64,000 bases of DNA from positions 27,466,001 through 27,530,000 of the forward strand of contig OZ287755.1 in NCBI GenBank assembly GCA_965649765.1. Direction: 5' to 3'. Source of the DNA: Bispira polyomma. Taxonomy: Eukaryota. The translations under genes were made by a program, and so were the position numbers. Of this stretch, positions 11,123 to 50,000 are shown in pieces. Under the pieces are notes generated by a model. It searched no databases and was not told where the DNA came from. It saw only the letters and a list, made by a program, of their open reading frames with translations. The first letter of the stretch is position 1; every line of letters starts with the position of its first letter.

Positions 11123-13990
11123 CTAAAGTAGTTAAAGTTAGTAATTGTAAGATTGTTGAGAGGCCTAGTCAAGTAACTGAAAATATTGTTTCACCCCTGG
11201 CAGTACAGCCGAGTTGTAATGTTAATGTATGTTAAAGTGTTCAAAATGCTAGAAATAAGGCTAACTGTAGAGACAATCTGAAAAATGATAGTTTTTAAAA
11301 TGGACGTTAAACCATTGCTCAAGGCAGTAGTACTAATAAGGTAATGGACATTGAAGTAAAGTTAGCCAGTAATGGATGTACCTGTTGTTTAAAGTTAAGG
11401 CAAGACGTCTGTACTTGCATAAGTTGTATATATTGTCTGGTTCAAAAATCCCTTATGGGGAGGGGCATGATAGTTCGCTTGAAGGTGAGCAGAAACCCAT
11501 GTTAAAACAAGTATTTACTGTCACAAATACTAGTTGTCTGGATTATCATCCAGTTATGTCAGGAACATGTGTAAAATCCACACAAAATGGCTGGATTTCA
11601 GCAAGCACAGTATTTCCTTTTGATAGCAAATTTCAAAATTACATCACTGCGCAACAGTCTGCGCAGAAGCGTTTAAATGGTTTGGGCGGAAATGGTCAAA
11701 CTCACTTGAGTTTAGGCAGCAATACTCTGCTAAGTTCTGTCAGAATGGCTCGGGAATGCACTTTAATCCGCGGAAACCTGGTTTCCGCGGTTCGGATAGA
11801 CTTCGTCCTTCCGAGGGGGGCACACAAGCCACTTTTTGCGACACATGTAATATTGTTGTGTCTGAAGTGTTGAATAGTTTGGGGCGTGGCGTTGTTTGTC
11901 GCGCATTAATACATTTTCTCTTATATACTACACCAAATCTGGTGAGGTGGCTGGCGTGTGGGTATATGTCTGACTAGGCTGCAATACCCAGCCAGCACTG
12001 CTGGATTGCTTACCATAGTTGGGCACACACTGAAGTTGTATAATACTTTGGCCTACTTGACTCGTGTGTTACTGGTTTGTTCATATTATGAGGGTACTTG
12101 CATCAAATTTATCTTACAAAGGAGTTTAGCAACTTTATTAGTAGAATTTGTGTACAGGAGACAGGAGTCTTAAAATTATAGCATTAACCATGAGTCTTAT
12201 CAGTAATTCCACACATACAGGCTTACAAAATCACTTAACTAGTAGTAGTTGTATACATAGCAAGGTCTGGCCATATATACTTGGCCCTGTTACTGGACAG
12301 TTCACACTGGGTTGTATTAAAGCAGTGTGTTATAGTCATGTTACCCAGAGTCTGTGTAGTATTATATATGACATTTCTATCTTTGTTATTAAATGTTGTA
12401 TTTATGTATGTATGTGGCAATGGTTACACTTGTATAAGTTCACTCTTGTTTACACAGCACAGGTTGTACTTGACAAGATGTACAGTTTAGTTGGTCTGTA
12501 AATTTGGTGGTTTTTGTATTGGTTCTCTACACACGTTGGGTGTCTTATTGTGCAACTTTGTAGGCATACACAAGGTAAGATTTACACAGTAATGTCTCAC
12601 CGGGTAATCATATAGACAGTAGTCAAGACCTTTCTTCATATTATAATGGTCATTATATACGGTGCATATATCCTGGACAATTTAAATTTGGCTACTTACC
12701 TGCAGGTAGTCAATTAATGCCAATTAATGGCAGCTGCAGTGCAATTAATTGTGATTCAGCAGTACAGTTGAACAAAGTTGTTAATGGTTATGGTGGTTGC
12801 TTTAATTTTGTGTATCCAGGTATTCCAGTACAGTCTTCACTTAACATACCTGTTTGGAGGAAGTTATTGGACAATTATTATGATAAGCAATTAGTGGAAT
12901 TATTGGAATTTGGTTTTGCTATTGATATGCACTCACTCATCAAGACAGTAACCACCCTGCAGCAGGTTCTTACCCAGATCATATTGCCCATTACTTAAAC
13001 ACTGAACATAAACATGGTGCTATTGAAGGTACTCATTATTGCCAGAGAATGACTGACAGTATTCGCTTTATTATGAGAACATAGGGATATGTTGTTTTTA
13101 ACTACATTGATGACATCATAGGTATCCATGCCTCTTATGATGCGGCTATGGCAGCTTACACTTTCTTATTATAACTGCTCTCCAATTTGGGTCTTCCAGT
13201 TAGTCCGGCTAAGTTGGAGACCCCTAGTAAATGTATTACTTGCTCAGGAATTAACATTGATGTTGGAAAGGGTAGTATAAGTTTGCCACCAGATAAATTA
13301 CTTGAAATCACTGAATTGTGTGTTGATTGGTCTAGTGGAAAGTTTGCAACCAAAAATCAAATTCAGAGTATTGCTGGTAAGCTATTGTACATTAGTAAGT
13401 GTGTCAGGCCTGCTAGATTATTCATCAATAGAATCTTACATGTGCTTCGCACTTGGCAAGAAAGAGGCAGGTTTAAGATAAGCAGTTCTTTCAGAGCAGA
13501 TGTCAGATGGTTTATACAATTTCTAGAACAATTTAATGGTGTTGTATTGTATGATAAGCCACAACAGCATAGTAACATTGTGTATGTGGATGCTATGTTT
13601 GACTGGACGTGGGGCAGTATATCAAAACACTGCTTATCATGTAGAGTTGTCCAATATCAAGGATCGACCTAAACTTATTGTTCACTTGAAAATGCTTAAT
13701 GTTTTCACTGCTCTCACTGTGTGGTCGCCTTCATTCAAAGGTTCTCATGTAATTTTGTATTGTAACAATTTGGCAGTAGTCAATGTACTCAATTTTAACA
13801 AGGGTAAGGATGCTTATCTTAATACAGTAGCATATTTGGTTACTTACGGCGTCACATGACATTACTTTGCAGGTTAGACATGTGGCGGGTGTTGATAACA
13901 TGGGGGCCATCTGTTATCTAGATACTCAGACTTAGCCAAACGGGCACAATTTCATGCCAGTTTTCAGCAGTTGCAATTGCTGCAGGTTCC
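11092..13990 (+). pseudogene. pol (RT + RNase H) of copy 1, frameshifted, with internal RT deletion
   Basis: IPVQSSLNIPVWRKLLDNYYDKQLVELLEFGF, NYIDD, GINID..LPPDKL, KCVRPARLFINR, YVDA, HLKMLNV..YCNNLAVV. Confidence 0.85.
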
Positions 13991-14063
13991 CTGTCATGCC
14001 ACCCCCTCACTTGGGATATTTAATGGTTACTATGAATGATTATGTATATGTTTGTTCTTACAG

Positions 14064-15010
14064 GTTCCACCCAGTTAAAACAATTACTGTCTGTGGCTTC
14101 CGCCCAGGCAAAAATGGTGTATCAGCCCAAAACTAGGGCTTGGTATTATAGGACTATGTCCACCTTTCTTAAGTTTTGTGTTACCAAGTCTGTTCAACAT
14201 CTCCAATACTCACTTAGTGTGGTTCTGGCTTACATTGAGCAATTGGTTCAAATTGGGCTCACTTATCCCTCCATTCAAAATCATTTGTCAGCCTTAAAGC
14301 ATTATTTCAGAAGGTTTGGATTGGATGTGGAAATTTTTAGTCATGTCCATGTGGTCATGCTTCTCAAGGCTATCAATAACAATGTCACTAGACAGGTGAA
14401 AGACAGATTTAATATATATTTGTGCTCAATGTGACAGGATCACACATGGTATAGTTTTAAGGCAGTGTTCTTAGTGGCTTTCTTTGGCCTTTTTAGAATA
14501 AGTAACTTGTTGTCACATAGAGTGTTTCAGTATGATTGCAAACGACTGTTATTACGTCGTGATGTGCAGTTTCAATCACGAGGTTTGGTGATACAAGTTA
14601 GATGGACTAAAACTATGCAAAGTAGACAAATTAGTGTGTCGTTGCAGTTACCTTTTATTAATGGTTCTCCGCTTTGTCCAACACAAGCGGTTCAACAGAG
14701 GTTTGATTGCTATCCGGCTTCTCTGGATGCACCACTTTTTGTATTACCTGGTTCTCAAAATCAGTACAAAATTTTGACAGATGTCAAAGTGCGTTATGTA
14801 TTAAAGGACATTTTAGGAGGCCTTGGCCTTAATACTCATACTCTTGGTTTTCATGCATTCAGGCGTTCAGGGGCTTCCCTCCTGTTTCAAAATAATGTTC
14901 CCTTGCAGTGTCTTCAGGCACATGGGACCTCAGATGCGGTTTGGGCTTACTTGTAAACTGGGGCCAATCTCTCCATCATCCCTCAAGCTTTTCAGGCCAT
15001 TCTACCTTAA
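14064..15010 (+). pseudogene. Tyrosine recombinase of copy 1
   Basis: SIQNHLSALKH, FFGLFRISNL (box I R), WTKT, LCP, FHAFRRSGA (HxxR), HGT-SDAVWAYL (catalytic Y); frameshift near 14430 and a stop at 14954. Confidence 0.9.
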
Positions 15011-15238: not shown

Positions 15239-16780
15239 ATTTTTTATTATACTGACATTGTGTTATACATATACAAATATACAAAATCACATTTTATTAA
15301 TTGTAACACTCAGCCTTAAGGCTTATAAGTCAGTTTAAATATAATATTCTAATTTAATGTGTGTATAAAAAGGTATAAAACTATTATTTTGCAGAAATGG
15401 TAAAATTCACAATTTATTGAACTTTCTATATCTTCAATTCTTTTAAAAATTTTGATTTCCTATATTCCCATAATTTACATAAAAATTTTGCAAATGTTTT
15501 AATATGTTTATCTTTGAGTGACATTAAATTAATAAATTTTTCTTCCGAACTCAAAAGATTAAAGTTTACTTCCACATTTTTAACAACATAATCAAAGAAC
15601 ACTTTTCTATCTCTATCGTAAACTGTACAGTCAATTAAAAAATGCTGTTCGTCTTCTATAAAATTTAAATTACACATTGTACATATCCTACTTGACAAAT
15701 CTCTTTTCTGGTATCTTCCAGTTTCTATGGCTAGAGGCAGTATTCCAGATCTTAATTGGGCAATGAGAGACCTTTCATTTCTATAAAGATTCTGTAATAC
15801 GTATTCTTCTGTATAAATATGAGTTTTATATTTGACATACAATCTTAATTTTGGTTTGGTACATATAGATTCTTGCCATTCGAGATCATTTAAACAAAAT
15901 AGCTTCTCTTCTGCGGTATTTAAATCAATGTCTTCTCCTAGGAGAAGTTTTTCTTGCAAGCCTATCTGATCTAAAATGTTTTCTAGGTCTCCGCTCCAAC
16001 TTTCATTTGTTATGTTCTGAAGATCATGTTCGAATATTTGATATGTTAGTCTCTCATTGTCCATTCTAATAAGCCTATTATAAAACTTAAAGATATTCAT
16101 ATACATTCTGAATTTTGGTTTTAGCCATCCTACATCCAATACATTTACTGGGTTTTTGCATGCACACCCAGAAAATAACGACATGCTCTATTCTGAATTT
16201 TATTGGCATAATTTGAGTGTGCAAAACCCCAAATACCACTACAGTAATCTGTTATAGGTATGATGCCACTTTCATATAATTTTGAGAATGTTTTGAATCC
16301 AATATTTTTATATTGTTTAAATTTTGATATTAATCCACCTAGTGCTCGCCCACCAGCTTCTGATAGTTCTTTTGCGCATACTTTATAATCTAGATGTTCA
16401 TGCAAAGATACACCTAAATACTTATATTGATCAACAATCTCAAGCTTTGAAGAACCAGTAACAAATTTACAACAAGACTGTGGTTTTCGTTTTTTGCGGA
16501 AATGTACTATTTGACTTTTTGATTCGTTTATTAATAAGTGCCATTTTTTGCACCACTGATCCAGTTTAGTCAATAAAAGCTGTAAATGTTCTTCGTTTTC
16601 TGCAATTAAAGCAATATCATCTGCATATAATAATATTGATATCTTTTTGTTACCAAAGGGGACACCTAAACCCATATTTTTTATTTCAATGGCTAAGTCA
16701 TTTATAAAGATTCCAAACAATGTTGGGGACAAATTGTCACCTTGTCTTAATCCTGAATTTACCACAAACCAAGAAGAAAG
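15208..16780 (-). mobile_element. 5'-truncated non-LTR retrotransposon (RTE-X-like) with (TCTA)n tail
   Basis: GLRQGDNLSPTLF, LLYADDIAL, YKYLG; C-terminal LAIETGRY..C..C..EDEQHFLIDC; one frameshift at ~16150; AATAAA followed by a TCTA microsatellite tail. Confidence 0.85.
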
Positions 16781-16869
16781 AATGCATGGAAAATAAACAA
16801 AATATACCAAGACATACTGTTATATATTTGTGTTACTTCAAGGTCTAAAATGGACTCGACTCTGGTCAC

Positions 16870-17511
16870 TGTGTTAACAAGTAGATGTTTGACAATAAGT
16901 TAAAACTCAACGAAAGAAAAATCATTCTTTTTGGATCCAAGAGTTTTTCTGACAATTTTCCAGTCAATATTCTGGGAAAGATCTTGTTGCCTCAAGTTGC
17001 AGTGTGTACAACACAGTTTGGCTCAGATAGTAATGAGGAAGTCGAAGTTAAGTCACATTACTCCTGTTTTAAAAACCCTCCACTGGCTGCCTATTGGGTA
17101 TACAACAATATTCAAAAACATCCCTCAGTCTATAAATATCTCAATTCAGGTCTCCCTCGGTATTTCAGTCCTTACTTGTCTCGCAATACATGTTAACGTA
17201 ATACAAGGTGTATAGTAGGCCTGAAAATGCTTTCTTAGGGGCTCTTGCTTTGTACGAAGACATTTTAACAATAGTTTCTCATATGATGCTGCTAAGCTAT
17301 AAAATAATATGCCTCATGATATTCGCACTGCCTCCTCACTTGCCTGTTTTTAGAAAACAGCCCAAAACCTACCTATTTAGCAAAGCTTTTCCACCTTGGC
17401 CTCCTTTTTCCGGCGTCTTCATGATCATGACCCATGTACCTCCAATGGCTATGTTAATTGTCAAATGATTTTCTGTCCTCTGCGCCTTAGAATCTGCTAG
17501 CACAGAGTTTA
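16870..17511 (+). mobile_element. L2-clade LINE 3' relic, split by the Harbinger insertion (tail resumes 22179-22210)
   Basis: MFDNKLKLN, SHITPVLKTLHWLPI, FRKQPKTYLFSKAFPP; tail gcgccttag..agagtTTA|gcattataaaag. Confidence 0.8.
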
Positions 17512-18211
17512 AGTGGGGGTTCCACATTCAGGATTTGGTCCCCGACCTTCCCGACTTTGAGGTCCGGGACACCTACAGGAAGGTCGGGGAGCAAAATCGG
17601 GGTTGTCGGGAAGGTCAGGAAGAATATCAAAAAAGTTAGAAATTTTAAAAGTGGTCCCGACTTTTGGTCCCGGACCTCAAAATCGGGATCATCAATATGT
17701 TCGATCCTATTACCAATATGTTCTGTCGGATAGGTCGGGGCGCACTGCCGGCCTGTCCTATTGCCGGCCCGTTCTGTCCTATTGGGATCCGCCCCTTTTT
17801 CAATACGACAGGCCGGGCTGCCAATCTGATCGAACTTATTTGACTCCCAACTTGACGTATTACTCCCCGATCGAACTTTTTGTCACCCCGGCAGAACTTG
17901 GTGTAAGCACGTTTTTTTACCCGATCAAACTTAACACAGCAGGACAGAACGTATTGGCTATCAGATCTGCCGGGAGAGGTAAAAGATCGAACTGGGGGAG
18001 GGTAGGACAGAACTTATCAGCCTTAGGATCTGGCGTATTCAGTACCGACCAATAGGATCGAACGGGGTTGTTTGGGTCGTTGTATTTGGAGATTGCTGAC
18101 TGGCACGAAGTTGTGTTTTTTGTAGAGAGGGATTTTTATTGTTTTTAATTAGTTATATGTTTTGAGTTTAGGGCAAGTTTTACAGTTAGGTTTTTTTTCA
18201 CAACATTAAAG

Positions 18212-19784
18212 ATGCCTAGATTGAGGAGAGTGAAGAGGAAGATTGTTGAACAGGAGAGAGAGGAGTTTGAAGTGGGAGTATCATCAGATGAGATAGAGAG
18301 GAAGAGGAGAGATGACAGAGAGTCCTGCAGTGAGTGAGAGAGCTGAGAGTGGGAGAGAGGATGCTTCACAAGTATTGCCTGGATCTTCACAGTACAGAGG
18401 ACACATAAAGAAGGCCGGCAAGATGGTCCATGTCATTCTGACAGAGGAGGACGAGGAATCAGTAGTGGATTTTGTCAGAGACAACGAGGTGCTTTTCAAC
18501 AAGCACCATGAACAGTTCAAAGACAGAGCACTGAAGGAGAAGTTGTGGTCCGATTTCGCAGCTACCTGTGGTTTGAAAACCAACGAGGTTAGGCCTTGGT
18601 TTGAGTCGCAGAGGACCTGCTTCGGCAAGTTGATAGTTAAGACCCTATTTTACAGAGCGAAGAAAACTGGCTGATCGCGCTTCTCTTTTCTTGGATATCA
18701 CATCGACAGGCATGTCAAGTCGTCAGGCTTCAAGCCCAGTGCTACGTCTACCCAGGGAGTGTCCCCACCCCGTCAGGGAAGCCACGATGTGTCCAGATAT
18801 TCCAGCATCGGAGAAGAGGGCGACAGCGTCACAAAGACCAGTCTCAGGAGCCTCCAGAGAAGTTCCCCGTCTCGACTCAGCTCAGACGCCAACCTCATGC
18901 TTGGAGAGCACCTCACGCAGATCAGGACACTGATGAGCAGCTTGGTTGGAGAGCAGAGAAGTCCCCAGAAGCCTGTGACCAACCGCAGCGCCTTTTTTGC
19001 TTACCTAGCAGCCGAGGCAGAGAAGTTAGATGTGGGCGAGTTTCAGAAGTTCCGAGACAGCACCTTTTCCTGTCTTAGCCAGATCCAGCAAGGTAGAAGT
19101 CAACCCGTGAGGAGTGCCTTCACCAGACCTGCCCCAACGTCTACCCTGTCGCGAGCGCCTGGATCGAGCTACGTCCCCCGGCAGTGTGTGCAGCAGTCTC
19201 AGCATCCTCAGCTTGTGGTGATGGATAGAGCTACACAGTCTTCGGCTGCTGCACAGAAGCCCGCGTTTCAATCACAGAACTTTCCGTTCCAGCAGTCTCA
19301 GCACCCACCACAGTACGTTGTGGTGGGTACAGCTACAGTGTCTTCAGCTGCTGGGTCGTCTCAGCAGAAGCCTGCTACCACGTTTCAACAACAGAACTTT
19401 CCGTCCCAGCAGTCTCAGCACCCACCACAGTTCGTTGTGGTGGGTACAGCTACAGAGTCTTTGGCTGCTGGGTCGTCCAGTGTCAAGTCGCCGACTTACT
19501 TTAGCTTGGAAGAACATTCAGGGGTTGCTACTAAGTTGATGCCGAGCATTTCTCCTAGTAAGCAGTACTCGAACCCACCTTCTAATGCATCCTTGTTTGA
19601 GGAGTCAGCACACAACACGTCAACGATTTCAAGCTTTCTGACGAAGTACAACAGCAAACTCCCCCAGGACTTCGGTTATGAGACAGTTAGTCCCAGCGCC
19701 CCAGGAATACTGGCAACGCCTTTACCAGTGGACAATCAGCAGTCACAGATTGACAATCAGCAGTCTCAGGCAGTCACAGATTGA
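18212..19784 (+). pseudogene. Harbinger Myb/SANT-like (MADF) DNA-binding protein
   Basis: ATG at 18212; EESVVDFVRDNEVLFNKHHEQFKDRALKEKLWSDFA..WFESQRTCFGKL (MADF); then RSAFFAYLAAEAEKL and a Q/S-rich repeated tail; 2-3 frameshifts. Confidence 0.85.
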
Positions 19785-20309
19785 CAACACACAGCAGCTG
19801 ATCGTCTCGCCAACACCTCAGCCAGAGTCAAAAAAAAAAAGAATCAAAACCTCCCAAAATTGCCCAAGTAAGTATCTAATTGAGATTGAAAATCCCTACC
19901 CCCATTGGAAAAGATTTTGTTGAAAGATAAGGGATACCAAATATGAGATATTGTTAGCAAAAAAAAAGTCTGTCCCTATAAGTACCGAATTGAGATATCA
20001 AGTCCCCATCCCCATAGTAAATGTTTCTGATAAATAATGACAGACAATAATTGCAAGAAATTGTTTTAGAAGGGAAGACAGTACAAAGTCTGTCCCAAAT
20101 AACCCAATAAGTACCAAATTGAGATACAAAACCAAAGGTTGTCAGTATGTCTGTGTGTGTAGGGCTTTTTACATTTTCAATGTTTTTGGGGGGAACTGGT
20201 TAAGTTGTATGTATGCAGGGGCCCTGGGTATTACATTTAGTGATTGTTATTGGTAATAGGTGGGGGGTGGGGGTGTAACAAATAGCTCAGATATTGTTTT
20301 TGAAATAAT

Positions 20310-20361
20310 TGGGTGGTCCTGAAAAGGACCTTTTAAATTTTGGGTGGTCCTGAAAAGGACC
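20310..20361 (-). terminator. Two tandem histone-type 3' stem-loops downstream of the transposase
   Basis: Minus strand: AAAA-GGTCCTTTTCAGGACC-ACCCA twice (stem-loops at 20346-20361 and 20315-20330), starting 75 nt after the transposase stop. Confidence 0.85.
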
Positions 20362-20436
20362 TTTTAAATTTTTTGCTACTGCAAGACCTCTGGGTTGGCT
20401 TCTCATCTGGCTCTTGTGGTTAGGCTCAGGCTCAGG

Positions 20437-21729
20437 CTAAACTCTTTCCTCTTGCCACGGGACAGCCCCCTCATTCATAAAAAAGTCCATTAATACGTCC
20501 CTCTGTTCTTTGGCCGCCCTGGATGGGTTTCTGTGGGTGGTTGGTTGACCTCTTACTAACTGGACCTCGGGTTCAGGTGGATCATCTTGTGGGTTAGGGT
20601 GCTTTAGTGCTGGGTTTCCACACCGGCTTCTCAGTATGTTATGTAATATCACACACATCAATGTCAGATTTGAGGTCACCAGGGGGTGCTGTTACATTGT
20701 CGTCAGTAATAGGCGGAAGCGGCTGGCCAAAATCCCAAAAGAGTTCTCCACTGCCCGCCTTCCCCTGGATATCCTGTAGTTACAAATTCTCTGTGCATGG
20801 GTGAGTTCCCTCCTCGAGTAGGATTTCATCATCCAAGTTTTCAGAGCAAAGGCGTCGTCCCCCAACAGGAAGTATTCCACGTCACGTCAAGACCCCTCAA
20901 ACAGTGGTTAAGGTCTGGGCAGCCCAATGGATGCATCTTCTATCTTCTGCTTGAGGTCTGAGTGGTTAAAAATTTTGGCGTCGGAACAGGAACCACTGCA
21001 TCCAATGTCTACCCAAATAAATCTGTAGTCCGCATCAACCAGGGCAAACAGGACAATGGAGTGGAAGCCTTTATAGTTGTAGAATTCGCTCCCAGCCTTG
21101 GGAGGCTTCTTAATGGCCACGTACTTCCCATCGATAGATCCAACAGCATGAGGGATATTCAACCTGGTCCTGTACACTTCTTCTATTTTCAGCCAGTCTG
21201 CGGGGGTGGTTGGGCAGGCTAGATTTTCTGTCTCTTATTCCGTAATGATGGCCTTGCATTCTTCTGGTATAAACTTGGTGATAGATGACTTCCCCACCAT
21301 GAACTGGTAGGACAGGGATCTGTAGTTCTCCCCAGTGGCCAGGTGCCTTAAAGTTACAGCCAGTTTCAGTCCAACATCCAAGGGCTTTCTGAACCAAGTG
21401 ACTTCTTTCTTCACATGGGGTGTTATCCTATCCTTGATTTCGTCAAATATGTCAGGTGGTAGCCTGAAAAAATTCCTGTATGAGGCTGCATCCCCTTCCT
21501 GTAGCTCCGGCACTAAGTTTGCGTAGTAGCTTAGGGCCTCTCTCTGACCGATCCAAGGCTTGACCCAGCAGGTGGGTGACATACGTGGAAGTCTAATCTT
21601 CTCCGGGGGAGCCCAAGGGGCGCGTGGTGGTGTTTGGTTCAAATCCTCCTGACCCTGAGCCTTGTCTTTCTCATGTTGTAATATAAGCATGAGGATACAT
21701 ATTTCAATCTCAAAAAAACTAACTGGCAT
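20437..21729 (-). pseudogene. Harbinger DDE transposase (HARBI1-like), intronless, frameshifted
   Basis: [94 protein letters not shown]. Confidence 0.95.
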
Positions 21730-22233
21730 TTTACTCACTTACTCAATTATTAATGACCTGATTACTCAAAAATTCTTGAGTTTTAGGGCTCAAAAAGAGG
21801 TACTTATGGGTCTAGAAGCACTCCTGACTTTAATTTTTAGAAAGTTCGAACCTATTGGTCGGGATGACCAATACGTCAGATCCTATAGTCAATACGTTCG
21901 ATCCTAAGTCAATACGTTCGATCCTATCGCCAATAAGTTTGATCCTATTCAGGTCGGGAAGGTCGGGAGTCAATGGAGTTCAAAGTCGTACGACCTTTAC
22001 ATACGATCGGGGTCGCGGGCCCGTCAAAACGGCGCGCAATCAGTTTAATTGGGAAGGTCGGGGCATATTTTCATTTTCCCGCCCAAAAAGTGGATTTTAT
22101 TGATTTTTTGGTCCCGACCTTCCCGACTTTAAAGTCGGGGTTTTTTTGCCGATCGAACTTAAGTGTGGAACCCCCCCTTTAGCATTATAAAAGTTAGATT
22201 GTTGATATTACTATTTTCACATCCTGCGCTTCC

Positions 22234-27896: not shown

Positions 27897-28882
27897 CTAG
27901 GAGTTGTGTAGGATGGAAGCCCTAAAAGAATCCGCAACCTGGGAACCAGCAAACGCCGAATCAGTAATATATCTCCAGACACAATCCGACGTCCAGGTGC
28001 CCTGTCTCTGGATATCTTGAATTCTAACATTGTTATTAAATGCAAACGTGGCACCTGAACATCTGAACACATAAAAAGTGAGACCTGTCTGCTCACAACC
28101 TAACATTTTTAGAACATTTTTTAGATGTCTACGTACTTTGGAATCCGTAAGCGGAACCCAATTTCGCCCACATTTGAACTGAAAGAGGGGAAGATTATCC
28201 CCTACAGGAGTGACAGCCAAAACATTTTTAATCGCTGTAACTGGACAGATGCTGGAACCAGGAAGGGCTGGGATGGTTATGAGCTTGACAACATCTCTAG
28301 TTTGAAGGGTTTTAGACCACTTCACCAATGTAACAGCATAGCCTGGTTTAAACGTAATGTCAGCTCGTGCTAGCTGTTTCAAAGGGTCAAAATCCCTGAC
28401 AGAATGTGGGCACAGATTTGACAAACGCAGGAAACTGAAAAAACTAATCAGATACACAGCTTTGAATACTAGTCCCATATATGTTACATGACATTTCTGG
28501 ATTAATTTTTCCAGCAGTGTGATATCAAACAGTGCCTTCAATTTTGCTTGCAGAGGTTTACTGACCGCCAGAGCCTTGTTGAAATACTTAATTCTGGTAT
28601 CAGAAAAAGCTTCTACTTGTACATGAAACAATACACATTTAGCCTTTATAGCAGAAAGGTAATTGGCAATTTGTGAAGCTGAAACTTTATTACTGTACAA
28701 GAACTCTAAAAAAGAGAGCAACTGCAATACATTCACCTTTTCCGGGCTCCAATCCATGAAAACCCCAAAAGCTATGAAGGTCCTGAACATTCTATCATAC
28801 GCTCTAGAGGTAGACAGAGAGAAGGCTCTGTGAGCTCTTTCACAAGCCTGTCTAACCAACATAAGCTCTCCTGGGTGAATGC
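27897..28882 (-). CDS. Tyrosine recombinase of copy 2 (HxxR histidine mutated)
   Basis: IANYLSAIK, FFSFLRLSNL, WSKT, ICPV, FYVFRCSGAT (HxxR with H>Y), GTWTSDCVWRY; preceded by ttgcAG acceptor. Confidence 0.9.
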
Positions 28883-28909
28883 CTGCAATATACACTATAC
28901 CATAATGAA

Positions 28910-31455
28910 TTATATGTTCTCATTAACCCTGAGCAATGCATGATGCACGGGCAGCCATTGCACAGGGCCTAGCAAGTCATGCAATGCTTTGTGATCTCTG
29001 TTGGTATCAGTCCATTTGGACAGCAAATCTGCTACTTTGTTTTTTACCCCCAAAATGTGAATGACTTTAATGTCGATGTCAAGTTTACTGACCAGCATAT
29101 AAATATTGCGCGTGTATGTGGCTAACGTAGGATCCCTTGTCGATCCGCTTTGCAAAACAGTCACAACTGCCTGGTTATCACACTTGATTAAGACACGTCT
29201 ATTTTGCCAAAGCCGGCCCCATAATTTAATTGCCACCAGTATGTTCAACATTTCTAGGTACGCTATGTTTAGTTCAGTCATATGAGTCGGGAGTTTCAAT
29301 TGGTAGACTTGATTTTGATAAACCCCCCCCCCCCATGCCTGTCAAACAGGCGTCAAGCTCTACTTGAGCTGTAACTGGAATATGAGAGAAAAAGGAAACT
29401 CCATTAAATTGTTGTATAAACACCGAGAACCAATTTAAATCTCTCCTGAATTCCTGAGTTATGTTTATACATTTACTGGTGTGATTGTCTCTCAACAATT
29501 GAAGCATACGATTTAAAAACGCCCTTGCATACTTTACACATTTTGACACGTAAAGTAACAGGCCTAGCAGGGATTGAAGTTCCCGTTTAGTACAAACATT
29601 TTTTGTTTCCCATGCTTCGCAGACGCTCTTAATTGCTTGCAATTTCTCAGGTGGAATCGAGGTAGTGAGGTGAACTGTGTCTATAGTGATACCCAAGCAG
29701 ATTACGGACGTACCAGGATGTACTAATTTTTTTTCACTGACAATTAAACCGAGCTCTGTCAAGAGTTCCTGTAATCTCATATACGTTTTCTGTATTTTGC
29801 TGGGCAGCGAGACACATAAAAAATCGTCGATATAATTGTGGACGTTATGATTTTCTGTTTTCATAATGTACCTCACGGCATCCGAAATTCTTTGAAAAAT
29901 AGTGCTGCCATTCTGATAACCGAACGGCAACGATTTATCTATGTAATATTTTTTCCAATTTAAACCTAATAGGTCTAGGTCACCCGGATCTATGGGCACG
30001 TGACGAAAGGCCCTACTATCGTCCACTTTAAAGATATGACAGCCTTTACCCATCTTAATGACCTCTTGCGTTAGACTGTCGACTGAAGGATATGACAGTA
30101 AAAACTCGGTGCCTAAGTAAGACGTGGGGGAGACCCCTGCATTTACCGAATATCCTTGCGGCCAACTAAGGTCCACAATAACTCTTCTGTTCTCTGAATT
30201 GGCTTTATCTCTCGTCATTAGGGGGGAACAATGTAAGTTTTCGATGGGTGGGTCATCAAAAGGACCTAACATGGCCCCCAGTGAACATTCTTCCGCCATA
30301 TAAAAATCTACATGAGCCGGGAATTCAGTCGCCGATTTATGATTATTCCCCTCATTGTGAGTTTTATTTTCTCGACAAAAATCTAATGGAAAGCCATGCT
30401 TGATCAATAAAGGCAACTGTTTATCCCAATAGTTAAGCAAATACTTATCCCATGCCTGAGTATTTAGCTGCGATTCAACCGGGAGCTTAAGGCCATTAAA
30501 ATTGAACCTGCCATCCGCCCTGACACGCTTGTGTATTTCTAACACGTGTAGTCGTTCCGTTTTTGTGCTTTCTGTGTTATTACTGGTCATGAAATCCGAG
30601 AGAGGTGTGAACCCATAAGCCACATCATTTTGTGCCTGCCACCTTTTGTAATTGTCATTATTCTTTGCCAAGTCTAACAAGAGACGTTTGTTTTTTCTCT
30701 GTTTGAGGCCCCATGTATATTTATCTGAAGGTAAAATGCACTCACTAGTACTGTCCTCCTTATTAAGGTTGTTTGTAGTAGCCAAGCCTGTGTAAAATCT
30801 GGTATCATTATTCTGAACCAGGCCTTGGCCCCCTTTGTTGGCTTGACGCCCTTTACCACACTTGCTATGATCTGTCTGTGCGTTAACCCTCACTGTGGTA
30901 ACATTAACAGGCCCAGTGTGAATGGCACTCCTGCCCCTCTCACTATCCCTGACAGACGCTTTGTGTCTTTTGTTCTCTATTGTGGCAATTTCTGGCCTGG
31001 TAGTTTCAGATTGATTACTCCCCCCTTTCCCCAGAGTGTCAATGTGAGCGAGAATGGCATACCTATTGTGAAGTGGAAGGGCACCCCGGGTTGAATTGTG
31101 TTCACACCTCCTCCCAGATCTCCTGTCCACCCCTTTTGTCTCTTTGTCACTAGACCTCACACTAGGATTGATTGTTTTCACGCCTACCTGCGGTACACCG
31201 CTGGGGAAATGGACTCTTTTGTAACCCTCTGTGTATTTGACTTTCAATAGATTTAGTATTGTTAATACTTCTTTTTACTACGTCGCTATACTTGACAGAG
31301 ATACTCCTGCCTTTCTGATATCTGATCATTTTCTGTACAACCGACTTTTGCAATAAAGCTACATCCCTAAACTGGGTATTATATACAACTCTAGTAAAGA
31401 CTCTGTTATTGACATTTGCATCCACTGCACTTAGGCAGTGGCCCCTTAGTTTTTT
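28910..31455 (-). pseudogene. pol (RT + RNase H) of copy 2
   Basis: RRVIVDLSWP, KVDDSRAFRHV, LPFG, NYIDD, CLGITID, LDACLTG, LEMLNILVA, CDNQAVV, NKVADLLS; frameshifts near 31200 and at a 12-G run (~29330). Confidence 0.92.
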
Positions 31456-32486
31456 AATGCCTTTTTGGGGCACATGCTGCTCCTGTGACTATTGTCACAG
31501 GTTTCGCATGTATGTTTGTAGAACTGCATACCTGTTTTATGACTAGTCGAATGTTTGCATGTGCCATCCTGAAAATAGCGACACGTGACCGCCCCTTGTT
31601 TGAAGTTATTTTTCTTGTGACTACTTCCCAACGTACGAATGCCTGCCCCCGTACCGGTTTGACCTGCATGCAAATGTCTCTGAGCATGGGCTCTACGAAT
31701 TCTGTCAACCTTTTCAATGTCTGACCATTTTAATTTGTCCATCTCCATATTCGTAAGGACGACTGCATGGCAAGCTTTAGCGGCCTCCCAGGAAAAATCC
31801 TGGGCATCCTCCATCAAGCCAGTCATGTAGTCGAGCATAGCGTTTTTATTTTCTTGCAACTTCTCTTCTTGAATGATTCGCGTAAAGCCACAGACCCATT
31901 GCACTACAGTTAGATCATCATAGCTGGGCCGTGCTTTGGTGCTACCCGATAGAACATGATTGTGGGGCCACTCTACAGTTCGTTTCACCAAAACTTCCAA
32001 CCCCCCTCCCCTCTGGGATTTGATCTTACCTTGGGAAGGGCTCTCGTTAATTTGCCTTAGCTCTTTAAGCCTTTGCTCAACCTGGGTTTGAATTTGTACA
32101 TTCTGTCTCAGAAATTCAATACTGGGAACAATCCTGGTGTCAGGTACGCCAGCGCTCTGACGGCTATCGCCCAAGTCTACAGAACTAATTTGCGAGACTG
32201 AATTTTTACTTGCCTGATTGTTAGAATTTTCCACCAGCGCTGCCTCTGTGAGCTGAACCCGTCGATCCATGCTCTGCACTGCCTGACTAATCGACTGCAG
32301 CTGTTTCAATATAACAGTCGACATATCTCTCTCACCAGAGACCGACACTGAATCCGACGGGTCCACCTCAGCTGAGTCAGCAACTGTATTCCCCAAAGAT
32401 ATGTCCAAAACATTACAATGTCGACCAACCGGCCTTGGGTGTTTCCCCAAACATTTGGAGCAGTATACACTCGAACGACGTGGCAT
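31446..32486 (-). CDS. gag-like protein of copy 2 (346 aa)
   Basis: Open frame; N-terminal CxxCxxxHxxPxGxxC; WPH..YDDLTVVQW; C-terminal C-x6-C-x5-H and CxxCxxxHxxxxC fingers. Confidence 0.9.
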   Translation of the reverse strand: MPRRSSVYCSKCLGKHPRPVGRHCNVLDISLGNTVADSAEVDPSDSVSVSGERDMSTVILKQLQSISQAVQSMDRRVQLTEAALVENSNNQASKNSVSQISSVDLGDSRQSAGVPDTRIVPSIEFLRQNVQIQTQVEQRLKELRQINESPSQGKIKSQRGGGLEVLVKRTVEWPHNHVLSGSTKARPSYDDLTVVQWVCGFTRIIQEEKLQENKNAMLDYMTGLMEDAQDFSWEAAKACHAVVLTNMEMDKLKWSDIEKVDRIRRAHAQRHLHAGQTGTGAGIRTLGSSHKKNNFKQGAVTCRYFQDGTCKHSTSHKTGMQFYKHTCETCDNSHRSSMCPKKALKN

Positions 32487-35089
32487 CACTGTGAATTATA
32501 AAAGCAACAACTAAAATACTAAAATACAATCAAAAACGAGCATAAATTCAAATGTGATGCCACGCTACTTTTCTAAACAATGCTCCCTGTTCTGTAAACT
32601 TCGGAAATGGCGGGAGAATTTTAGAGGAGCCGGCTTTTATACTACCGCACATAGCCTGCAAATTAGTCAGCCTGGTACCCGAGAACTGACCTTGCTGCCG
32701 CCCGGGTCGTCATCTCATAAAGTTGGATAGAAAGGCAAGATGCAGACACAGTAAGAACAACATGTTAACTCGTTTGGATTTTATTAAAACACACACACAC
32801 ACAATTCATTAACACTATTATGTAATCCCCAGTATGAGGTTACCTTAAGATCTAGCCAACCTGTTTGAGGTCACCTTAACTTTGCCTATTATTTAAGGTT
32901 ACCCTTAAGTAATGCGAATTTTTGCCTTCTGTTTTATGGTTTCCTTAAATTGCACTTAAGGTGCCCTTAAGTTGTTGAGTTTGAGGTGTCCTCAAACTGA
33001 TGATTACTTACACAACATTCTTCGTGACTATCAACTAAAACTATGTACCTTAAGTATGAATTGTAATATGTATATAATGTAAATTACCTACGTATACATT
33101 ACTTATAGTGATATGAAGTATCAAGTGCCGCGAAACCACTGGAGGCCAGTTTGGAACCCGGGTCCTACGGCACCTATTCGCCTAGCAGTAAAGGTTCCCG
33201 GCTGCAGAGCTTTGGTCCCTGGTAGCCCACACCAGGGTGTAGATACAAGCCGAGAACCAGTACCACACGGATCCGGGTTCAAAATCTGCCCGCAGCAGCA
33301 CGCAAGGCACACAGCACTGCAATCAGACATGTAAAACTAAAACAAGTAGACTAAAAACAGCTATGATAAGGAAAATACAATAAACCAACCTTGCAAAGGC
33401 TGAGCCTTGAAAAAGGCTGATTTGCTCTGAAGAGCATTAAGACCTGTACATTATGCATGCGCACATGGCATAATTAGTAACCATGACGGAGAAAAAGGAT
33501 GTGAACGTGCTTGCATGTTGCCATTCTATAGAAATTACTATCTGAGGGTGAGGAGGGTGGGAGTTTTTGATCCACACCTTCCAAGCATTTATTCCAGAAT
33601 GATGTATGTAATGCTTGGGCCCCCAAACCTGGGGTTTTTGGCGGGAAATAAAGTTTTGTGGGTAAACTTGCTAATGAGCATCAATGTGACAGAAAGAGAG
33701 ATTGTCACCTGACGCTAGCCTTTATAAGGCGCGCGTTCAACTTAATATCAGGAAATGGTAGTAGTATTTCGCTATAAAAGCTCATTTATGAAACTAATTT
33801 TGACAATAATTGAAAAACACCTACTGAGGCAATCAGCCTGATCATTTTAGTATCACTGCAATATATGACTATTGCAACTGAATGACCTGGCTTGTAGCAA
33901 GAAACCAAAATAATCTGTCAAAGAGCAATTAATGAGGATCTCTAGTTCACCCTTTTCTGAAAATGTGTACAACAGCCTCATCGTCACAATGTACCTTTAC
34001 TAACTTTTTCTGCCAATATTTGCCCCACCCTTGCAACATGACATGTTTATCATCTCATAGTGTACTATAGGTTACATATGTGCAAAACTAGCATATACGT
34101 GGCTGCATCCATGTGGAGGGTAGGTCATTATCAAATATTATGAAATGAACAGTCAACAAAAATAACCGAATTTTATGCATAAGGTCATCTGCTATTTACA
34201 TAATGTTCTCATTCAAGTTCAAATTGTACTTAATCTGAAAATGCAGACAAGATAAAGGAAGCTAAGGTGGCCTTTACACCTTATGCTTAGGTGGCATTTC
34301 ACCAAAAGAATAAGTAAATTCTTAAAAACCCAGGATAAGGTGACCTTATCCCCTTACTGAAAATCAACTCTATATATAAACATAAAAGTATACATTAGAA
34401 AATAATTTTTTAACGGTTTAATTTACCGCAATCTTGTTAATAACTTTAAATACTTGCTGCTCCCCCCAAAAAAAAATCCTTCTTGTTCCAACATATAAAT
34501 GCAAAGTTTTGCAAATGATGCTCCTACCCTATGGAATAGTTTACCCCCTTTTCCGTCAACAAGGCATCAGCATATACTAAGAAATCTGGGTCACTGTCGA
34601 TGAATCATAACACCCATATTCAACACACAAAGGGAAGCTAAAATGAAAACGCCTGCACTTTTATAGTATGGAACCCTGTTTGTCGTACAATATTATAAGC
34701 TTGAACAACCCACTGCTTAAGGGGAACATATTCCAACACAGATGACTTGTTCTTCCACACATACAAGAAAATTTCCTGTCCCAAACCCCTGTACCATACT
34801 ACATGATGCACCTAGAAGCCGATAATAAAGCCTATTCAACAGCGAGAAAAACTGTATGAATCTTGATTAGGAATTAAGTCCAAGTATACATTGGGGATTG
34901 CTATTATGTAAGGGAACACTGGACTGAACTGATTAAGGTCATGTGACAATGGAATACAAACAATATACAGAGAGCACGTAATGGTGGGTAGAAAGTTTAT
35001 CACTGGTTATGCGACACATTAATTCCTTCCAGGGCACTGTGGAAAACCAGAATGGCCAACAAATAATAAGGCTTCTTATAAAAGATTTG

Positions 35090-47000: not shown

Positions 47001-50000
47001 GGAGGTAAAATGGCCTAAAATCGCCTAAAATCACCTAGATCTTGGGAGGTAGCTCCATATGGATGTAAAATCGCCTAAATCTTGGGAGGTAGCTCTAAAA
47101 TCGCTCAAATCTTGGGAGATAGCTTGAAAATCGCCTAAATCTTGAGAGGTAGTTTGAAAATCGCCTGACTCTTGGGAGGTAATTTATAACAAACTTTTAT
47201 GAGGAATTAATTTCATAAGGAATTTATTTTCTATGAATGTATTATTATATGTATTCTACTAAATAACCATTGTATTGTTATATTTATTCTTCATCCTATT
47301 TGGGGATTATAATATACAGTCTAGGATTTAATTTTGTATTAATGTATTCTTATATGTAGTATTATATTTATTCTTCATTCGGTTTGGGAATTATATAATA
47401 TACAGTCTGGGGATTATTTTTTTCATATTTATTCGAAATTAGAATATTAGAAAAAAGTACTTTGAGCAGGCCTGATATCAAAAGATTTATATATTAAAGC
47501 AATCATTGAATTTAAGTATTTTAACTTCAAAATAATTTCGGTGAGTGTACATATATAGGGGGTATTTGGAGATAAGAGTACATCTATAGAGTGTCTGTAG
47601 GTAAGTGTACATCTATAGAGTGTCTGTAGATGAGTGTACATCTATAGAGTGTCTGTAGGAGATGAGTGTACATCTATAGAGTGTATGTAGGAGATGAGTG
47701 TACATCTATGGAGTGTCTGTTGGAGATGAGTGTACATCTATAGAGTGTCTGTAGGAGATGAGTGTACATCTACAGAGTGTATGTAGGAGATGAGTGTACA
47801 TCTAGAGAGTGTCTGTAGGAGATGAGTGTCAATCTATAGAGTGTCTGTTGGAGATGAGTGTACATCTATAGAGTGTATGTAGGAGATGAGTGTACATCTA
47901 TAGAGTGTCTGTTGGAGATGAGTGTATATCTATAGGGTGTCTGTAGGAGATGAGTGTACATCTATAGAGTGTATGTAGGAGATGAGTGTACATCTATAGA
48001 GTGTATGTAGGAGATGATTGTACATCTATGGAGTGTCTGTTGGAGATGAGTGTGCATCTATAGAGTGTCTGTAGGAGATGAGTGTACATCTACAGAGTGT
48101 ATGTAGGAGATGAGTGTACATCTAGAGAGTGTCTGTAGGAGATGAGTGTACATCTATAGAGTGTATGTAGGAGATGAGTGTACATCTATAGAGTGTCTGT
48201 TGGAGATGAGTGTACATCTATAGAGTGTCTGTTGGAGATGAGTGTACATCTATAGGGTGTCTGTAGGAGATGAGTGTACATCTATAGAGTGTATGTAGGA
48301 GATGAGTGTACATCTATAGAGTGTATGTAGGAGATGAGTGTACATCTATAGAGTGTATGTAGGAGATGAGTGTGCATCTATAGAGTGTCTGTTGGAGATG
48401 AGTGTACATCTATAGAGTGTCTATATAAGATGAGTGTACATCTATAGAGTGTATGTAGGAGATGAGAGTACATCTATAGAGTGCCTGTGGGAGATGAGTG
48501 TACATCTATAGAGTGTCTGTAGATAAGTGTACATCTATAGAGTGTCTATTGGAGATGAGTGTACATCTATAGAGTGTATGTAGGAGATGAGTGTACATCT
48601 ATAGAGTGTATGTAGGAGATGAGTGTACATCTATAGAGTGCCTGTATGAGATGAGTGTACATCTATAGAGTGTCTGTAGGAGATGACTGTACATCTATGG
48701 AGTGTCTGTTGGAGATGAGTGTACATCTATAGAGTGTATGTAGGAGATGAGTGTACATCTACAGAGTGTATGTAGGAGATGAGTGTACATCTAGAGAGTG
48801 TCTGTAGGAGATGAGTGTCAATCTATAGAGTGTATGTAGGAGATGAGTGTACATCTATAGAGTGTATGTAGGAGATGAGTGTACATCTATAGAGTGTCTG
48901 TTGGAGATGAGTGTACATCTATAGAGTGTCTGTTGGAGATGAGTGTATATCTATAGGGTGTCTGTAGGAGATGAGTGTACATCTATAGAGTGTATGTAGG
49001 AGATGAGTGTACATCTATAGAGTGTATGTAGGAGATGATTGTACATCTATGGAGTGTCTGTTGGAGATGAGTGTACATCTATAGAGTGTCTGTAGGAGAT
49101 GAGTGTACATCTACAGAGTGTATGTAGGAGATGAGTGTACATCTAGAGAGTGTCTGTAGGAGATGAGTGTCAATCTATAGAGTGTCTGTTGGAGATGAGT
49201 GTACATCTATAGAGTGTCTGTTGGAGATGAGTGTACATCTATAGAGTGTATGTAGGAGATGAGTGTACATCTATAGAGTGTCTGTTGGAGATGAGTGTAC
49301 ATCTATAGAGTGTCTGTTGGAGATGAGTGTATATCTATAGGGTGTCTGTAGGAGATGAGTGTACATCTATAGAGTGTATGTAGGAGATGAGTGTACATCT
49401 ATAGAGTGTCTGTTGGAGATGAGTGTACATCTATAGAGTGTCTGTAGGAGATGAGTGTACATCTATAGAGTGTCTATATAAGATGAGTGTACATCTATAG
49501 AGTGTATGTAGGAGATGAGAGTACATCTATAGAGTGCCTGTGGGAGATGAGTGTACATCTATAGAGTGTCTGTAGATAAGTGTACATCTATAGAGTGTCT
49601 ATTGGAGATGAGTGTACATCTATAGAGTGTCTGTAGGAGATGAGTGTACATCTATAGAGTGTCTGTATGAGATGAGTGTACATCTATAGAGTGTATGTAG
49701 GAGATGAGTGTACATCTATAGAGTGTATGTAGGAGATGAGTGTACATCTATAGAGTGCCTGTATGAGATGAGTGTACATCTATAGAGTGTCTGTAGGAGA
49801 TGACTGTACATCTATGGAGTGTCTATATAAGATGAGTGTATATCTATAGAGTGTATGTAGGAGATGAGTGTACATCTATAGTGTGCCTGTGAGAGATGAG
49901 TGTACATCTATAGAGTGTCTGTATGAGATGAGTGTACATCTATAGAGTGTATGTAGGAGATGAGTGTACATCTATAGAGTGTATGTATGAAATGAGTGTA

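What the first reader, a model, noticed from the sequence alone, without database searches (positions are those of the whole stretch)
20280..20439. Harbinger transposase mRNA appears to end in tandem histone stem-loops: a transposon co-opting replication-dependent histone 3' processing
Seen: on the transposase sense (minus) strand, 75 nt after the stop codon, the sequence reads AAAA-GGTCCTTTTCAGGACC-ACCCA-aaattt-AAAA-GGTCCTTTTCAGGACC-ACCCA-attatttCAAAAACAA. It lies inside the TIR/TSD-bounded element, the transposase gene is intronless, and no histone ORF is nearby. Established: replication-dependent histone mRNAs end in a 16-nt hairpin (6-bp stem starting GG, UUUC loop closed by U-A) with A-rich 5' and ACCCA 3' flanks. 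SLBP binds the hairpin and U7 snRNP cleaves using a purine-rich downstream element, which restricts these mRNAs to S phase and supports oocyte storage. Cut-and-paste transposons gain copies when they move during replication. Inference: this family makes non-polyadenylated, SLBP-controlled transposase mRNA that times transposition to S phase or early embryos. The A-rich tract after the second hairpin is only a weak HDE candidate. I know of no description of this arrangement, but could not search the literature.
Basis: partly seen in the sequence, partly recalled or inferred. Interest (0 to 1): 0.92.

Follow-up and report, generated by a model that had tools for sequence, protein, structure and literature searches.

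The report
Harbinger transposon genes with histone-type ends
Both genes of an abundant cut-and-paste transposon in this animal end in the stem-loop and downstream signal that normally finish only histone messenger RNAs, and related transposons in other genomes keep the same signals, so the element has probably borrowed the cell's histone RNA-finishing machinery, though no RNA data could test this.

Summary
Window 20346-20361 and 20315-20330 (minus strand) are two identical 16-nt histone-type hairpins, starting 75 and 106 nt after the stop of a DDE_Tnp_4 transposase. The distal one scores 41.2 bits on Rfam Histone3 (cut-off 34).

The element (17512-22178, TTA duplications) is a dead, internally deleted copy of a PIF/Harbinger family with over 1000 candidate copies.

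New points:
- Fuller copies carry a further histone-type hairpin on the opposite strand, about 58 nt after the convergent MADF-like gene. The window copy has lost it by deletion.
- Transposons 52-60% identical in transposase, from four other assemblies, keep the module. Around it, non-coding DNA is at random identity.
- All stem changes are compensatory (3 of 6 pairs, 100% paired).
- Relatives in Mercenaria, Pinctada and Mytilus edulis carry AATAAA and no hairpin.
- The tandem hairpin marks a subfamily (14 of 23 copies) but recurs in one foreign relative.

No RNA run was available and U7 was not found, so cleavage, missing poly(A) and S-phase timing stay inferred. Other agents of this scan reported the same on other windows of this genome.

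The parts
17509..17511 (.). Left target-site duplication TTA
   Evidence: TTA flanks both ends. Family alignments end at 17508-17511.
17512..17526 (+). Left terminal inverted repeat (15 nt, 1 mismatch to the right end), followed by subterminal short repeats
18211..19784 (+). ORF2, a MADF (Myb/SANT-like) gene convergent with the transposase; broken in this copy by a frameshift and stop in the MADF part at 18423-18806
   Evidence: tblastn of the intact MADF part onto the window. PF10545, E 5.7e-09, on the intact copy L039:2352-2822(-); 341-aa ORF at 18759-19784.
19829..19830 (.). Junction of a ~577-bp internal deletion that removed ORF2's own histone-type hairpin and downstream element, which fuller copies carry
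   Evidence: query 2471/2472 are adjacent here but 577 bp apart in C2:31.64 Mb. Histone3 hit on ORF2's sense strand inside that segment (L036:4533-4579, minus).
20130..20131 (.). Junction of a ~230-bp internal deletion relative to other copies
   Evidence: blocks 120-2170 and 2171-2470 are adjacent here but about 230 bp apart elsewhere.
20277..20309 (-). Histone-downstream-element (HDE) look-alike. Its core CAAAAACA is at 20302-20295, 12 nt after the stem, and is followed by an ATATCTGAGCT...TTGTT tract
   Evidence: core at +12 in all five host histone 3' flanks and in the transposon modules. The 38 nt after the stem are 75% identical on average to host flanks, against 50% (sd 4%) for shuffles.
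20310..20330 (-). Distal hairpin SL2 (20330-20315) plus ACCCA (20314-20310); predicted cleavage after ACCCA
   Evidence: RF00032 at 41.2 bits; forms in the fold.
20341..20365 (-). Proximal hairpin SL1 (20361-20346) with AAAA and ACCCA flanks. It is the first unit of the 31-nt tandem duplication and has no HDE at the proper distance
   Evidence: 26.2 bits; present in 14 of 23 less-biased copies.
20437..21690 (-). Transposase gene (DDE_Tnp_4 / Plant_tran), one frame, no intron, 4 in-frame stops in this copy
   Evidence: An intact 419-aa version is at L036:2044-3303.
22164..22178 (-). Right terminal inverted repeat
22179..22181 (.). Right target-site duplication TTA

Best explanation
The two hairpins are the 3' processing signal of the transposase gene of a PIF/Harbinger transposon family. 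This family, together with a wider clade of Harbingers, ends both of its intronless genes with the signal of replication-dependent histone mRNAs instead of a poly(A) signal.

The signal has three parts: a 16-nt stem-loop that keeps the nucleotides SLBP reads, an ACC(C)A spacer, and a downstream element at +12 nt that copies the host's own histone downstream element.

The likely mechanism runs as follows. SLBP binds the hairpin next to the cleavage site (SL2 in this copy). U7 snRNP pairs with the downstream element. The CPSF73-containing cleavage factor cuts after ACCCA, at window ~20310. The resulting non-polyadenylated mRNAs would then share the fate of histone mRNAs, meaning SLBP-dependent export, translation and decay. 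That would tie synthesis of transposase and its MADF partner to S phase and/or to maternal storage in oocytes and early embryos.

Shown here: the signals exist, belong to the family, match the host's signals, and are under purifying selection across distant relatives. Inferred: binding, cleavage, lack of poly(A), timing, and any benefit to the transposon. The extra upstream hairpin SL1 is a 31-bp duplication carried by one subfamily. It would stay inside the mature 3' UTR as a second possible SLBP site.
For: 1. Rfam RF00032 scores 41.2 bits (cut-off 34) at 20335-20289, minus strand.

2. The hairpin is a family trait. There are at least 1064 first-look candidates for a 251-nt probe, and the 40 scored copies are 92-100% identical. 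Hairpins sit at +75/+106 nt after the stop in 28 of 30 copies. In a less biased sample, 14 copies have two and 9 have one.

3. Fuller copies have a separate Histone3 hit (34-36 bits) on the opposite strand, about 58 nt after the stop of the convergent MADF gene. It is present in 16 of 23 copies.

4. The host's H2B, H3 and H4 genes end in a GGCTCT stem-loop followed, at +12 nt, by a CAAGAACA core and a further conserved tract. The transposon modules have CAA(G/A)AACA at +12 (+11 in L073). They are 69-75% identical on average to the host flanks over 38 nt, against 50% (sd 5%) for shuffles.

5. Harbingers with 52-60% identical transposases in four other assemblies carry the module 17-45 nt after the transposase stop: L067, L073, L082 and L080. 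L067 and L073 also carry it after the convergent MADF gene.

6. The module is an island of conservation. The 69-nt module is 71% identical across four families, while the UTR before it is at 37% and the 100 nt after it at 53%, both at shuffle level. The last 120 coding nt are at 65%. BLAST of L073 against this genome aligns only coding DNA plus the hairpin region.

7. Covariation: 13 distinct hairpins are 100% paired, 3 of 6 pairs show changes on both sides, and none changes on one side only. Stem G2-C, C5-G, U6-A and loop U1 and U3 never vary.

8. Relatives in Mercenaria, Pinctada and Mytilus edulis lack the hairpin and carry AATAAA instead. Those in Littorina, Lytechinus and Mytilus trossulus show neither. 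So the hairpin is a clade-specific alternative rather than a by-product of the transposase gene.

9. Both genes are intronless, as histone genes are. An SLBP gene is present in the genome. Nine of 54 sampled loci, some overlapping, keep transposase ORFs of 400 aa or more.
Against: - No RNA evidence exists. The three runs that hold the element are of unknown kind and cover genes and intergenic DNA alike, as genomic contigs would.
- U7 snRNA was not found by Rfam RF00066. A pattern for an HDE-complement plus Sm site gave chance-level hits, and none completed the Sm consensus. Pairing with U7 is therefore untested.
- The transposase-side core differs from the host core at one central base (CAAAAACA against CAAGAACA).
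- ORF2's hairpin lacks the A-rich 5' flank and scores only just above the Rfam cut-off.
- AATAAA motifs lie about 315 nt (transposase side) and about 140 nt (ORF2 side) beyond the hairpins in L036 and could be the ends actually used.
- The copies are scattered across the genome, away from the histone arrays where processing factors concentrate.
- The transposase tree does not resolve whether hairpin-bearing elements form one clade.
Confidence: 0.7

Rival explanations
1. The signals do work as histone-type 3' ends, but what the transposon gains is not S-phase timing. It gains a very compact, intron-independent and poly(A)-independent way to cut and terminate transcripts. That stops the two convergent genes from reading into each other and making double-stranded RNA, or it gives access to maternal mRNA storage.
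For: - The two genes face each other about 1.2 kb apart, and each has its own signal on its own sense strand.
- The same convergent layout with two signals is kept in L067 and L073.
- The 3' UTRs are short, 17-106 nt.
Against: Relatives with the same convergent layout manage with ordinary AATAAA signals, as in Mercenaria and Pinctada. Nothing here separates this benefit from cell-cycle coupling, and the two are not exclusive.
Confidence: 0.2
2. The hairpins are an inert piece of a histone gene's 3' flank that an ancestor of this family picked up and then copied along passively, with no role in expression.
For: The module resembles host histone 3' flanks over about 60 nt. After insertion, individual copies decay by single uncompensated changes, as neutral DNA would.
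Against: - The signal is present after both genes, each time in the sense orientation and just past the stop.
- It is kept in families whose transposases are only 52-60% identical, while neighbouring non-coding DNA is randomised.
- Stem changes are all compensatory, and the positions SLBP reads are invariant.
- The +12 spacing is fixed.
- The stems (GGTCCT, GGCCCT, AGTCCT) differ from the host's GGCTCT, so this is not a recent copy of a host gene.
Confidence: 0.05
3. The palindromes act at the DNA level, for example as a binding site for the transposase or MADF protein or as a cruciform or replication pause, and only look like the RNA signal.
For: The stems are perfect palindromes in DNA, and Harbinger accessory proteins do bind DNA. 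This rests on general knowledge and was not tested here.
Against: - The asymmetric features follow the sense strand of the adjacent gene in every case: loop TTTC, the ACCCA flank, and the downstream element at +12 on one side only.
- The conserved downstream tract copies the host histone element.
- The site lies in the middle of the element, not at its ends, where the subterminal binding repeats are found.
Confidence: 0.05

Closest known systems
[quoted passage not shown]
   Same: - A 6-bp stem and 4-nt loop, with G at stem position 2, a U-A closing pair and loop U1 and U3 invariant.
- An ACC(C)A spacer.
- A downstream element with the same core and the same +12 spacing as this animal's H2B, H3 and H4 genes.
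- A short 3' UTR and intronless genes.
- A score above the Rfam cut-off.
   Different: - The signal sits behind a transposase gene and a MADF gene of a mobile element present in over 1000 scattered copies, not behind histone genes in arrays.
- The stems differ from the host's by compensated pairs.
- One subfamily has two hairpins in tandem.
- Processing itself has not been shown.
[quoted passage not shown]
PIF/Harbinger DNA transposons (DDE_Tnp_4 transposase plus a Myb/SANT-like DNA-binding protein, TWA target duplication)
   Same: - DDE_Tnp_4 / Plant_tran transposase.
- A second MADF (Myb/SANT-like) gene.
- Short terminal inverted repeats and a TTA duplication.
- The closest named relatives are annotated 'putative nuclease HARBI1' in molluscs and sea urchins.
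   Different: Named relatives checked here in Mercenaria, Pinctada and Mytilus edulis have ordinary AATAAA signals after the transposase gene and no histone-type hairpin. Those in Littorina, Lytechinus and Mytilus trossulus also lack the hairpin.
U7 snRNA repression of HERV1/LTR12 and lincRNAs in human cells (bioRxiv 10.1101/2023.08.25.554787)
   Same: It links the histone-processing snRNP to mobile-element transcripts through HDE-like sequences. I read only the abstract.
   Different: There U7 acts on retroelement LTR transcripts as a repressor, and no stem-loop-plus-HDE 3' end on a transposon gene is described. Here the full two-part histone signal sits at the 3' end of both protein-coding genes of a DNA transposon.

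Membership tests
Histone-type 3' end signal (RF00032 / SLBP-U7 processing) | A 16-nt hairpin with a 6-bp stem and 4-nt loop that scores above the Rfam Histone3 gathering score | tested here: met
   41.2 bits against a cut-off of 34 at window 20335-20289(-). Family copies score 35-41 bits and ORF2 hairpins 34-36 bits.
Histone-type 3' end signal (RF00032 / SLBP-U7 processing) | The nucleotides SLBP recognises: G at stem position 2, U-A closing pair, U at loop positions 1 and 3, A-rich 5' flank, ACC(C)A 3' flank (list recalled from established SLBP work) | tested here: met
   Invariant in 13 distinct transposon and host hairpins. The exception is ORF2 hairpins, which lack the A-rich 5' flank.
Histone-type 3' end signal (RF00032 / SLBP-U7 processing) | A histone downstream element at a fixed distance 3' of the hairpin | tested here: met
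   The core CAA(G/A)AACA lies at +12 (+11 in L073), as in host H2B, H3 and H4. About 75% identity to host flanks over 38 nt, against 50% for shuffles.
Histone-type 3' end signal (RF00032 / SLBP-U7 processing) | The downstream element is complementary to the 5' end of the species' U7 snRNA | tested here: inconclusive
   U7 was not found. RF00066 gave no hit, the pattern search was at chance level, and the candidates fail the Sm consensus.
Histone-type 3' end signal (RF00032 / SLBP-U7 processing) | Transcripts end a few nt after the stem and lack poly(A) | not testable with these tools
   No RNA run was available, and the three runs behave as DNA contigs. There is one hint: a Logan contig, L080, consists of 29 nt + ORF + 44 nt and stops 6 nt past ACCCA, but the kind of its run is unknown.
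Histone-type 3' end signal (RF00032 / SLBP-U7 processing) | The host has the machinery (an SLBP gene, and histone genes with the same signal) | tested here: met
   PF15247 matches two exons at C5:32.895-32.898 Mb. Host histone arrays carry stem-loops.
PIF/Harbinger transposon | DDE transposase of the DDE_Tnp_4 / Plant_tran type | tested here: met
   PF13359 at E 3.2e-29 on the intact copy. Fragments in the window score E 1e-13 and 1.9e-09.
PIF/Harbinger transposon | A second gene for a Myb/SANT-like DNA-binding protein | tested here: met
   PF10545 MADF at E 5.7e-09 (own family) and 1.3e-11 (L073).
PIF/Harbinger transposon | Terminal inverted repeats and a 3-bp TWA target-site duplication | tested here: met
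   15-nt ends with 1 mismatch, and TTA on both sides.

The most novel reading that the evidence does not exclude
A clade of Harbinger transposons has, over a long evolutionary span and in several host genomes, expressed both of its genes as SLBP/U7-processed, non-polyadenylated mRNAs. These would be the first non-histone genes, and the first selfish elements, known to use the replication-dependent histone mRNA pathway. The pathway would couple production of the transposition machinery to DNA replication or to maternal mRNA stores.
Probability: 0.5. Interest if true: 0.9.

Novelty: new variant of a known kind. Interest (0 to 1): 0.8.

Why it matters
Histone mRNAs are held to be the only cellular mRNAs that end in a stem-loop instead of a poly(A) tail (PMC4604434). 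A mobile element that carries the complete two-part signal behind both of its genes would matter in four ways.

- It would be the first non-histone user of the pathway.
- It would be a natural test of what is sufficient for U7-dependent processing away from histone loci.
- It offers a concrete mechanism by which a cut-and-paste transposon could confine its transposase to S phase, when moving from replicated to unreplicated DNA gains copies, or load it into eggs.
- Poly(A)-selected RNA-seq would systematically miss the expression of such elements.

The comparative evidence here makes the idea directly testable with simple RNA experiments. That evidence is the match to the host signal, the conservation island, the compensatory changes, and the relatives that use poly(A) signals as contrasts.

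Tried and rejected
- RNA evidence. The look-up of sequencing runs returned three runs of unknown kind from one study. Their Logan contigs cover coding and intergenic parts alike, at depths expected for a high-copy DNA repeat, and show no ends. They say nothing about expression.

- U7 snRNA. Rfam RF00066 gave no hit in the genome. A pattern combining the complement of the host downstream core with a loose Sm site gave 10 hits against 10 in the reversed control. Three similar hits looked like the sea-urchin layout, but none completes the RUUUNUCYNG consensus of PMC5054213, so I dropped them.

- More genome letters. I therefore could not inspect the best scattered Histone3 hits, the 1727-bp array on C4, or further families, and I did not try to read them another way.

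- Single origin. The transposase tree leaves the backbone unresolved, with hairpin-bearing elements in two moderately supported groups. One versus two acquisitions cannot be decided.

- Species identity. The nearest named transposases are from bivalves, a gastropod and sea urchins.

- Run metadata. The run behind contig L080 (SRR9074987) is cited in no held paper.

- Literature. Five searches found no description of a transposon gene with a histone-type 3' end. A 2026 preprint on the evolution of this machinery does not mention transposons.

- Rejected readings: a one-off captured fragment, a nested insertion, and a DNA-level palindrome (see rivals).

Full report
**What is in the window**

Read on the minus strand, window 20361-20346 and 20330-20315 are two identical 16-nt hairpins: a 6-bp stem beginning GG, a loop TTTC, and a T-A closing pair. 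Each is preceded by AAAA and followed by ACCCA. Together they form a perfect 31-nt tandem repeat.

The distal hairpin with its downstream tract scores 41.2 bits on Rfam Histone3 (gathering score 34, E 9.6e-09 over 64 kb). It is the only Rfam family hit in the window. The proximal hairpin scores 26.2 bits because the second hairpin occupies the place of a downstream element. Both form in the minimum-free-energy fold.

The hairpins begin 75 and 106 nt after the TAG (20439-20437) of a gene whose pieces match DDE_Tnp_4 and Plant_tran.

The element runs from 17512 to 22178. It has 15-nt inverted ends and a TTA duplication on both sides. A MADF-type second gene lies on the plus strand at about 18211-19784. 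That makes it a PIF/Harbinger transposon.

The copy is dead. The transposase frame has four in-frame stops, ORF2 is broken, and two internal segments of about 230 and 577 bp are missing. No histone gene lies in the window.

**The hairpin belongs to the family, and the second gene has one too**

A 251-nt probe across the hairpins found at least 1064 first-look candidates in this 1.04-Gb genome. The 40 scored copies are 92-100% identical.

In the 30 copies fetched with that probe, 28 have both hairpins at +75/+106. In 23 copies found with the whole element, a less biased sample, 14 have two hairpins and 9 have one. The tandem form therefore marks a subfamily, the one this window belongs to.

Copies decay by single uncompensated changes, as expected after insertion.

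Nine of 54 sampled loci, some overlapping, keep a transposase ORF of 400 aa or more. One is the 419-aa ORF at L036:2044-3303.

In fuller copies Rfam finds a further Histone3 hit of 34-36 bits on the opposite strand. It lies about 58 nt after the stop of the convergent MADF gene, on that gene's sense strand. Its stem is GGCCCT/AGGGCC and its loop is TTTT. It sits inside the 577-bp segment that the window copy has lost, and 16 of 23 copies keep it.

**The downstream tract copies the host's own signal**

The genome has large histone arrays. In three repeats, the H2B, H3 and H4 genes each end about 32-35 nt before a GGCTCT stem-loop (38-41 bits). Twelve nt after the stem comes a CAAGAACA core, followed by a further conserved tract.

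The transposase module has CAAAAACA at +12, and the ORF2 module has CAAGAACA at +12. In both, the following roughly 20 nt also resemble the host tract.

Over the 38 nt after the stem, the transposon modules average 69-75% identity to the host flanks. Shuffled controls give 50% (sd about 5%, maximum 70%). An SLBP gene is present.

**Relatives in other genomes**

The intact transposase finds 2162 relatives. The nearest named ones are from bivalves, a gastropod and sea urchins, at about 50% identity. I fetched DNA around twelve of them.

Four of the five nearest, at 54-60% identity, have sequence beyond the stop, and all four carry a histone-type hairpin 17-45 nt after it. The fifth, P0001 (L081, 60% identity), sits on a contig that ends one base past its stop, so it is uninformative.
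- L067 and L073 (ENA assemblies): each also has a second hairpin on the other strand, after the convergent MADF gene.
- L082: a metagenome contig.
- L080: a Logan contig.

L073 again has two hairpins in tandem, with a 25-nt period. All four keep a CAA(G/A)AACA core at +11 or +12 wherever the contig reaches that far.

A second, older family in this genome, about 70% identical to L067, has a decayed transposase-side hairpin and a 42-bit ORF2-side hairpin.

Seven relatives show no Histone3 hit at E up to 0.05. They come from Mercenaria, Pinctada (two), Mytilus (two), Littorina and Lytechinus. Four of them carry AATAAA within about 60-150 nt of the true stop: Mercenaria, both Pinctada loci, and Mytilus edulis.

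**Evidence for selection**

Across four families, the 69-nt module is 71% identical. The last 120 coding nt are 65% identical. The UTR between stop and hairpin (37%) and the next 100 nt (53%) are at shuffle level. BLAST of L073 against this genome aligns only coding DNA and the hairpin region.

In 13 distinct hairpins from transposons and host, every cell is paired. Three of six pairs show changes on both sides, and none shows a one-sided change. None of 500 shuffles reaches the observed pairing or covariation score.

Hairpins on the transposase side share the GTCCT stem core across genomes, and ORF2-side hairpins share GGCCCT. This suggests both modules predate the split of these families.

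The transposase tree has long branches (0.2-0.55 changes per site). It places the hairpin-bearing elements in two moderately supported groups on an unresolved backbone.

**Mechanism and its limits**

The most economical reading is that these transposons use the histone pathway. SLBP binds the hairpin, U7 snRNP pairs with the +12 element, and cleavage follows ACCCA.

In the two-hairpin subfamily, only the distal hairpin has the downstream element at the right distance. The mature RNA would therefore keep both hairpins.

None of this could be tested at the RNA level. The only runs on offer behave like genomic DNA, and U7 could not be found. S-phase or maternal timing is inference from what is established for histone mRNAs.

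Points against are listed under the best explanation. They include the central G-to-A difference in the transposase-side core, the poor 5' flank of ORF2's hairpin, and AATAAA motifs 140-315 nt further on.

**Novelty**

Five full-text searches found no description of a transposon gene with a histone-type 3' end (also 53).

Other agents of this scan reported the same phenomenon from other windows of this genome. My tests agree with them and add several things:
- the foreign relatives
- the conservation island
- the compensatory changes
- the fixed spacing
- the contrasts with poly(A)-type relatives
- the one-hairpin and two-hairpin subfamilies

Noticed in passing
G000:C4:54707086-54812449 (outside the window): More than 60 Histone3 hits of identical score (40.6 bits), spaced 1727 bp apart on one strand. 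This period is far shorter than the 4.8-4.9-kb histone repeats elsewhere in the genome. It could be a single-gene histone array (for example H1) or a tandemly amplified unit carrying a histone-type hairpin.
   Followed up: no
G000: C5:56368243, C9:19182869, C2:16794129, C4:4003589, C1:79490430, C7:22096930, C4:29933104 (outside the window): These are the best-scoring Histone3 hits in the genome (43-46 bits). They are single and scattered rather than in histone arrays, so they may mark other gene or transposon families with histone-type ends.
   Followed up: no
window 48001-54000: A 6-kb stretch with extreme GC skew (+0.49 to +0.57) at ordinary GC content. It is probably a strand-asymmetric repeat or satellite.
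   Followed up: no
window 27897-32489 (-) and 13187-14956 (+): Long ORFs of a retroelement carrying a tyrosine-recombinase-like gene: 657-aa, 347-aa and 332-aa ORFs. Other notes of the scan call these Ngaro-like elements.
   Followed up: no
window 15426-16810 (-): Two adjoining ORFs (252 and 221 aa) that look like a reverse-transcriptase fragment of a LINE-like element, just outside the left end of the Harbinger.
   Followed up: no
L036:3698 (own-genome copy C2:31.64 Mb): Six to ten contigs per run leave the element at the same point and continue with a shared unrelated sequence. This is probably the breakpoint of an abundant deletion derivative or subfamily.
   Followed up: no
L061:2202-2272: The Rfam 'mir-297' hit between host histone genes is a (TGTA)n microsatellite scoring below the family cut-off. 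It is a false positive.
   Followed up: yes
L080 (Logan contig of SRR9074987), 1-1363: The contig consists of 29 nt, a 429-aa transposase ORF and 44 nt, and it stops 6 nt past the ACCCA of a histone-type hairpin. These are mRNA-like boundaries, but the kind of the run is unknown.
   Followed up: partly
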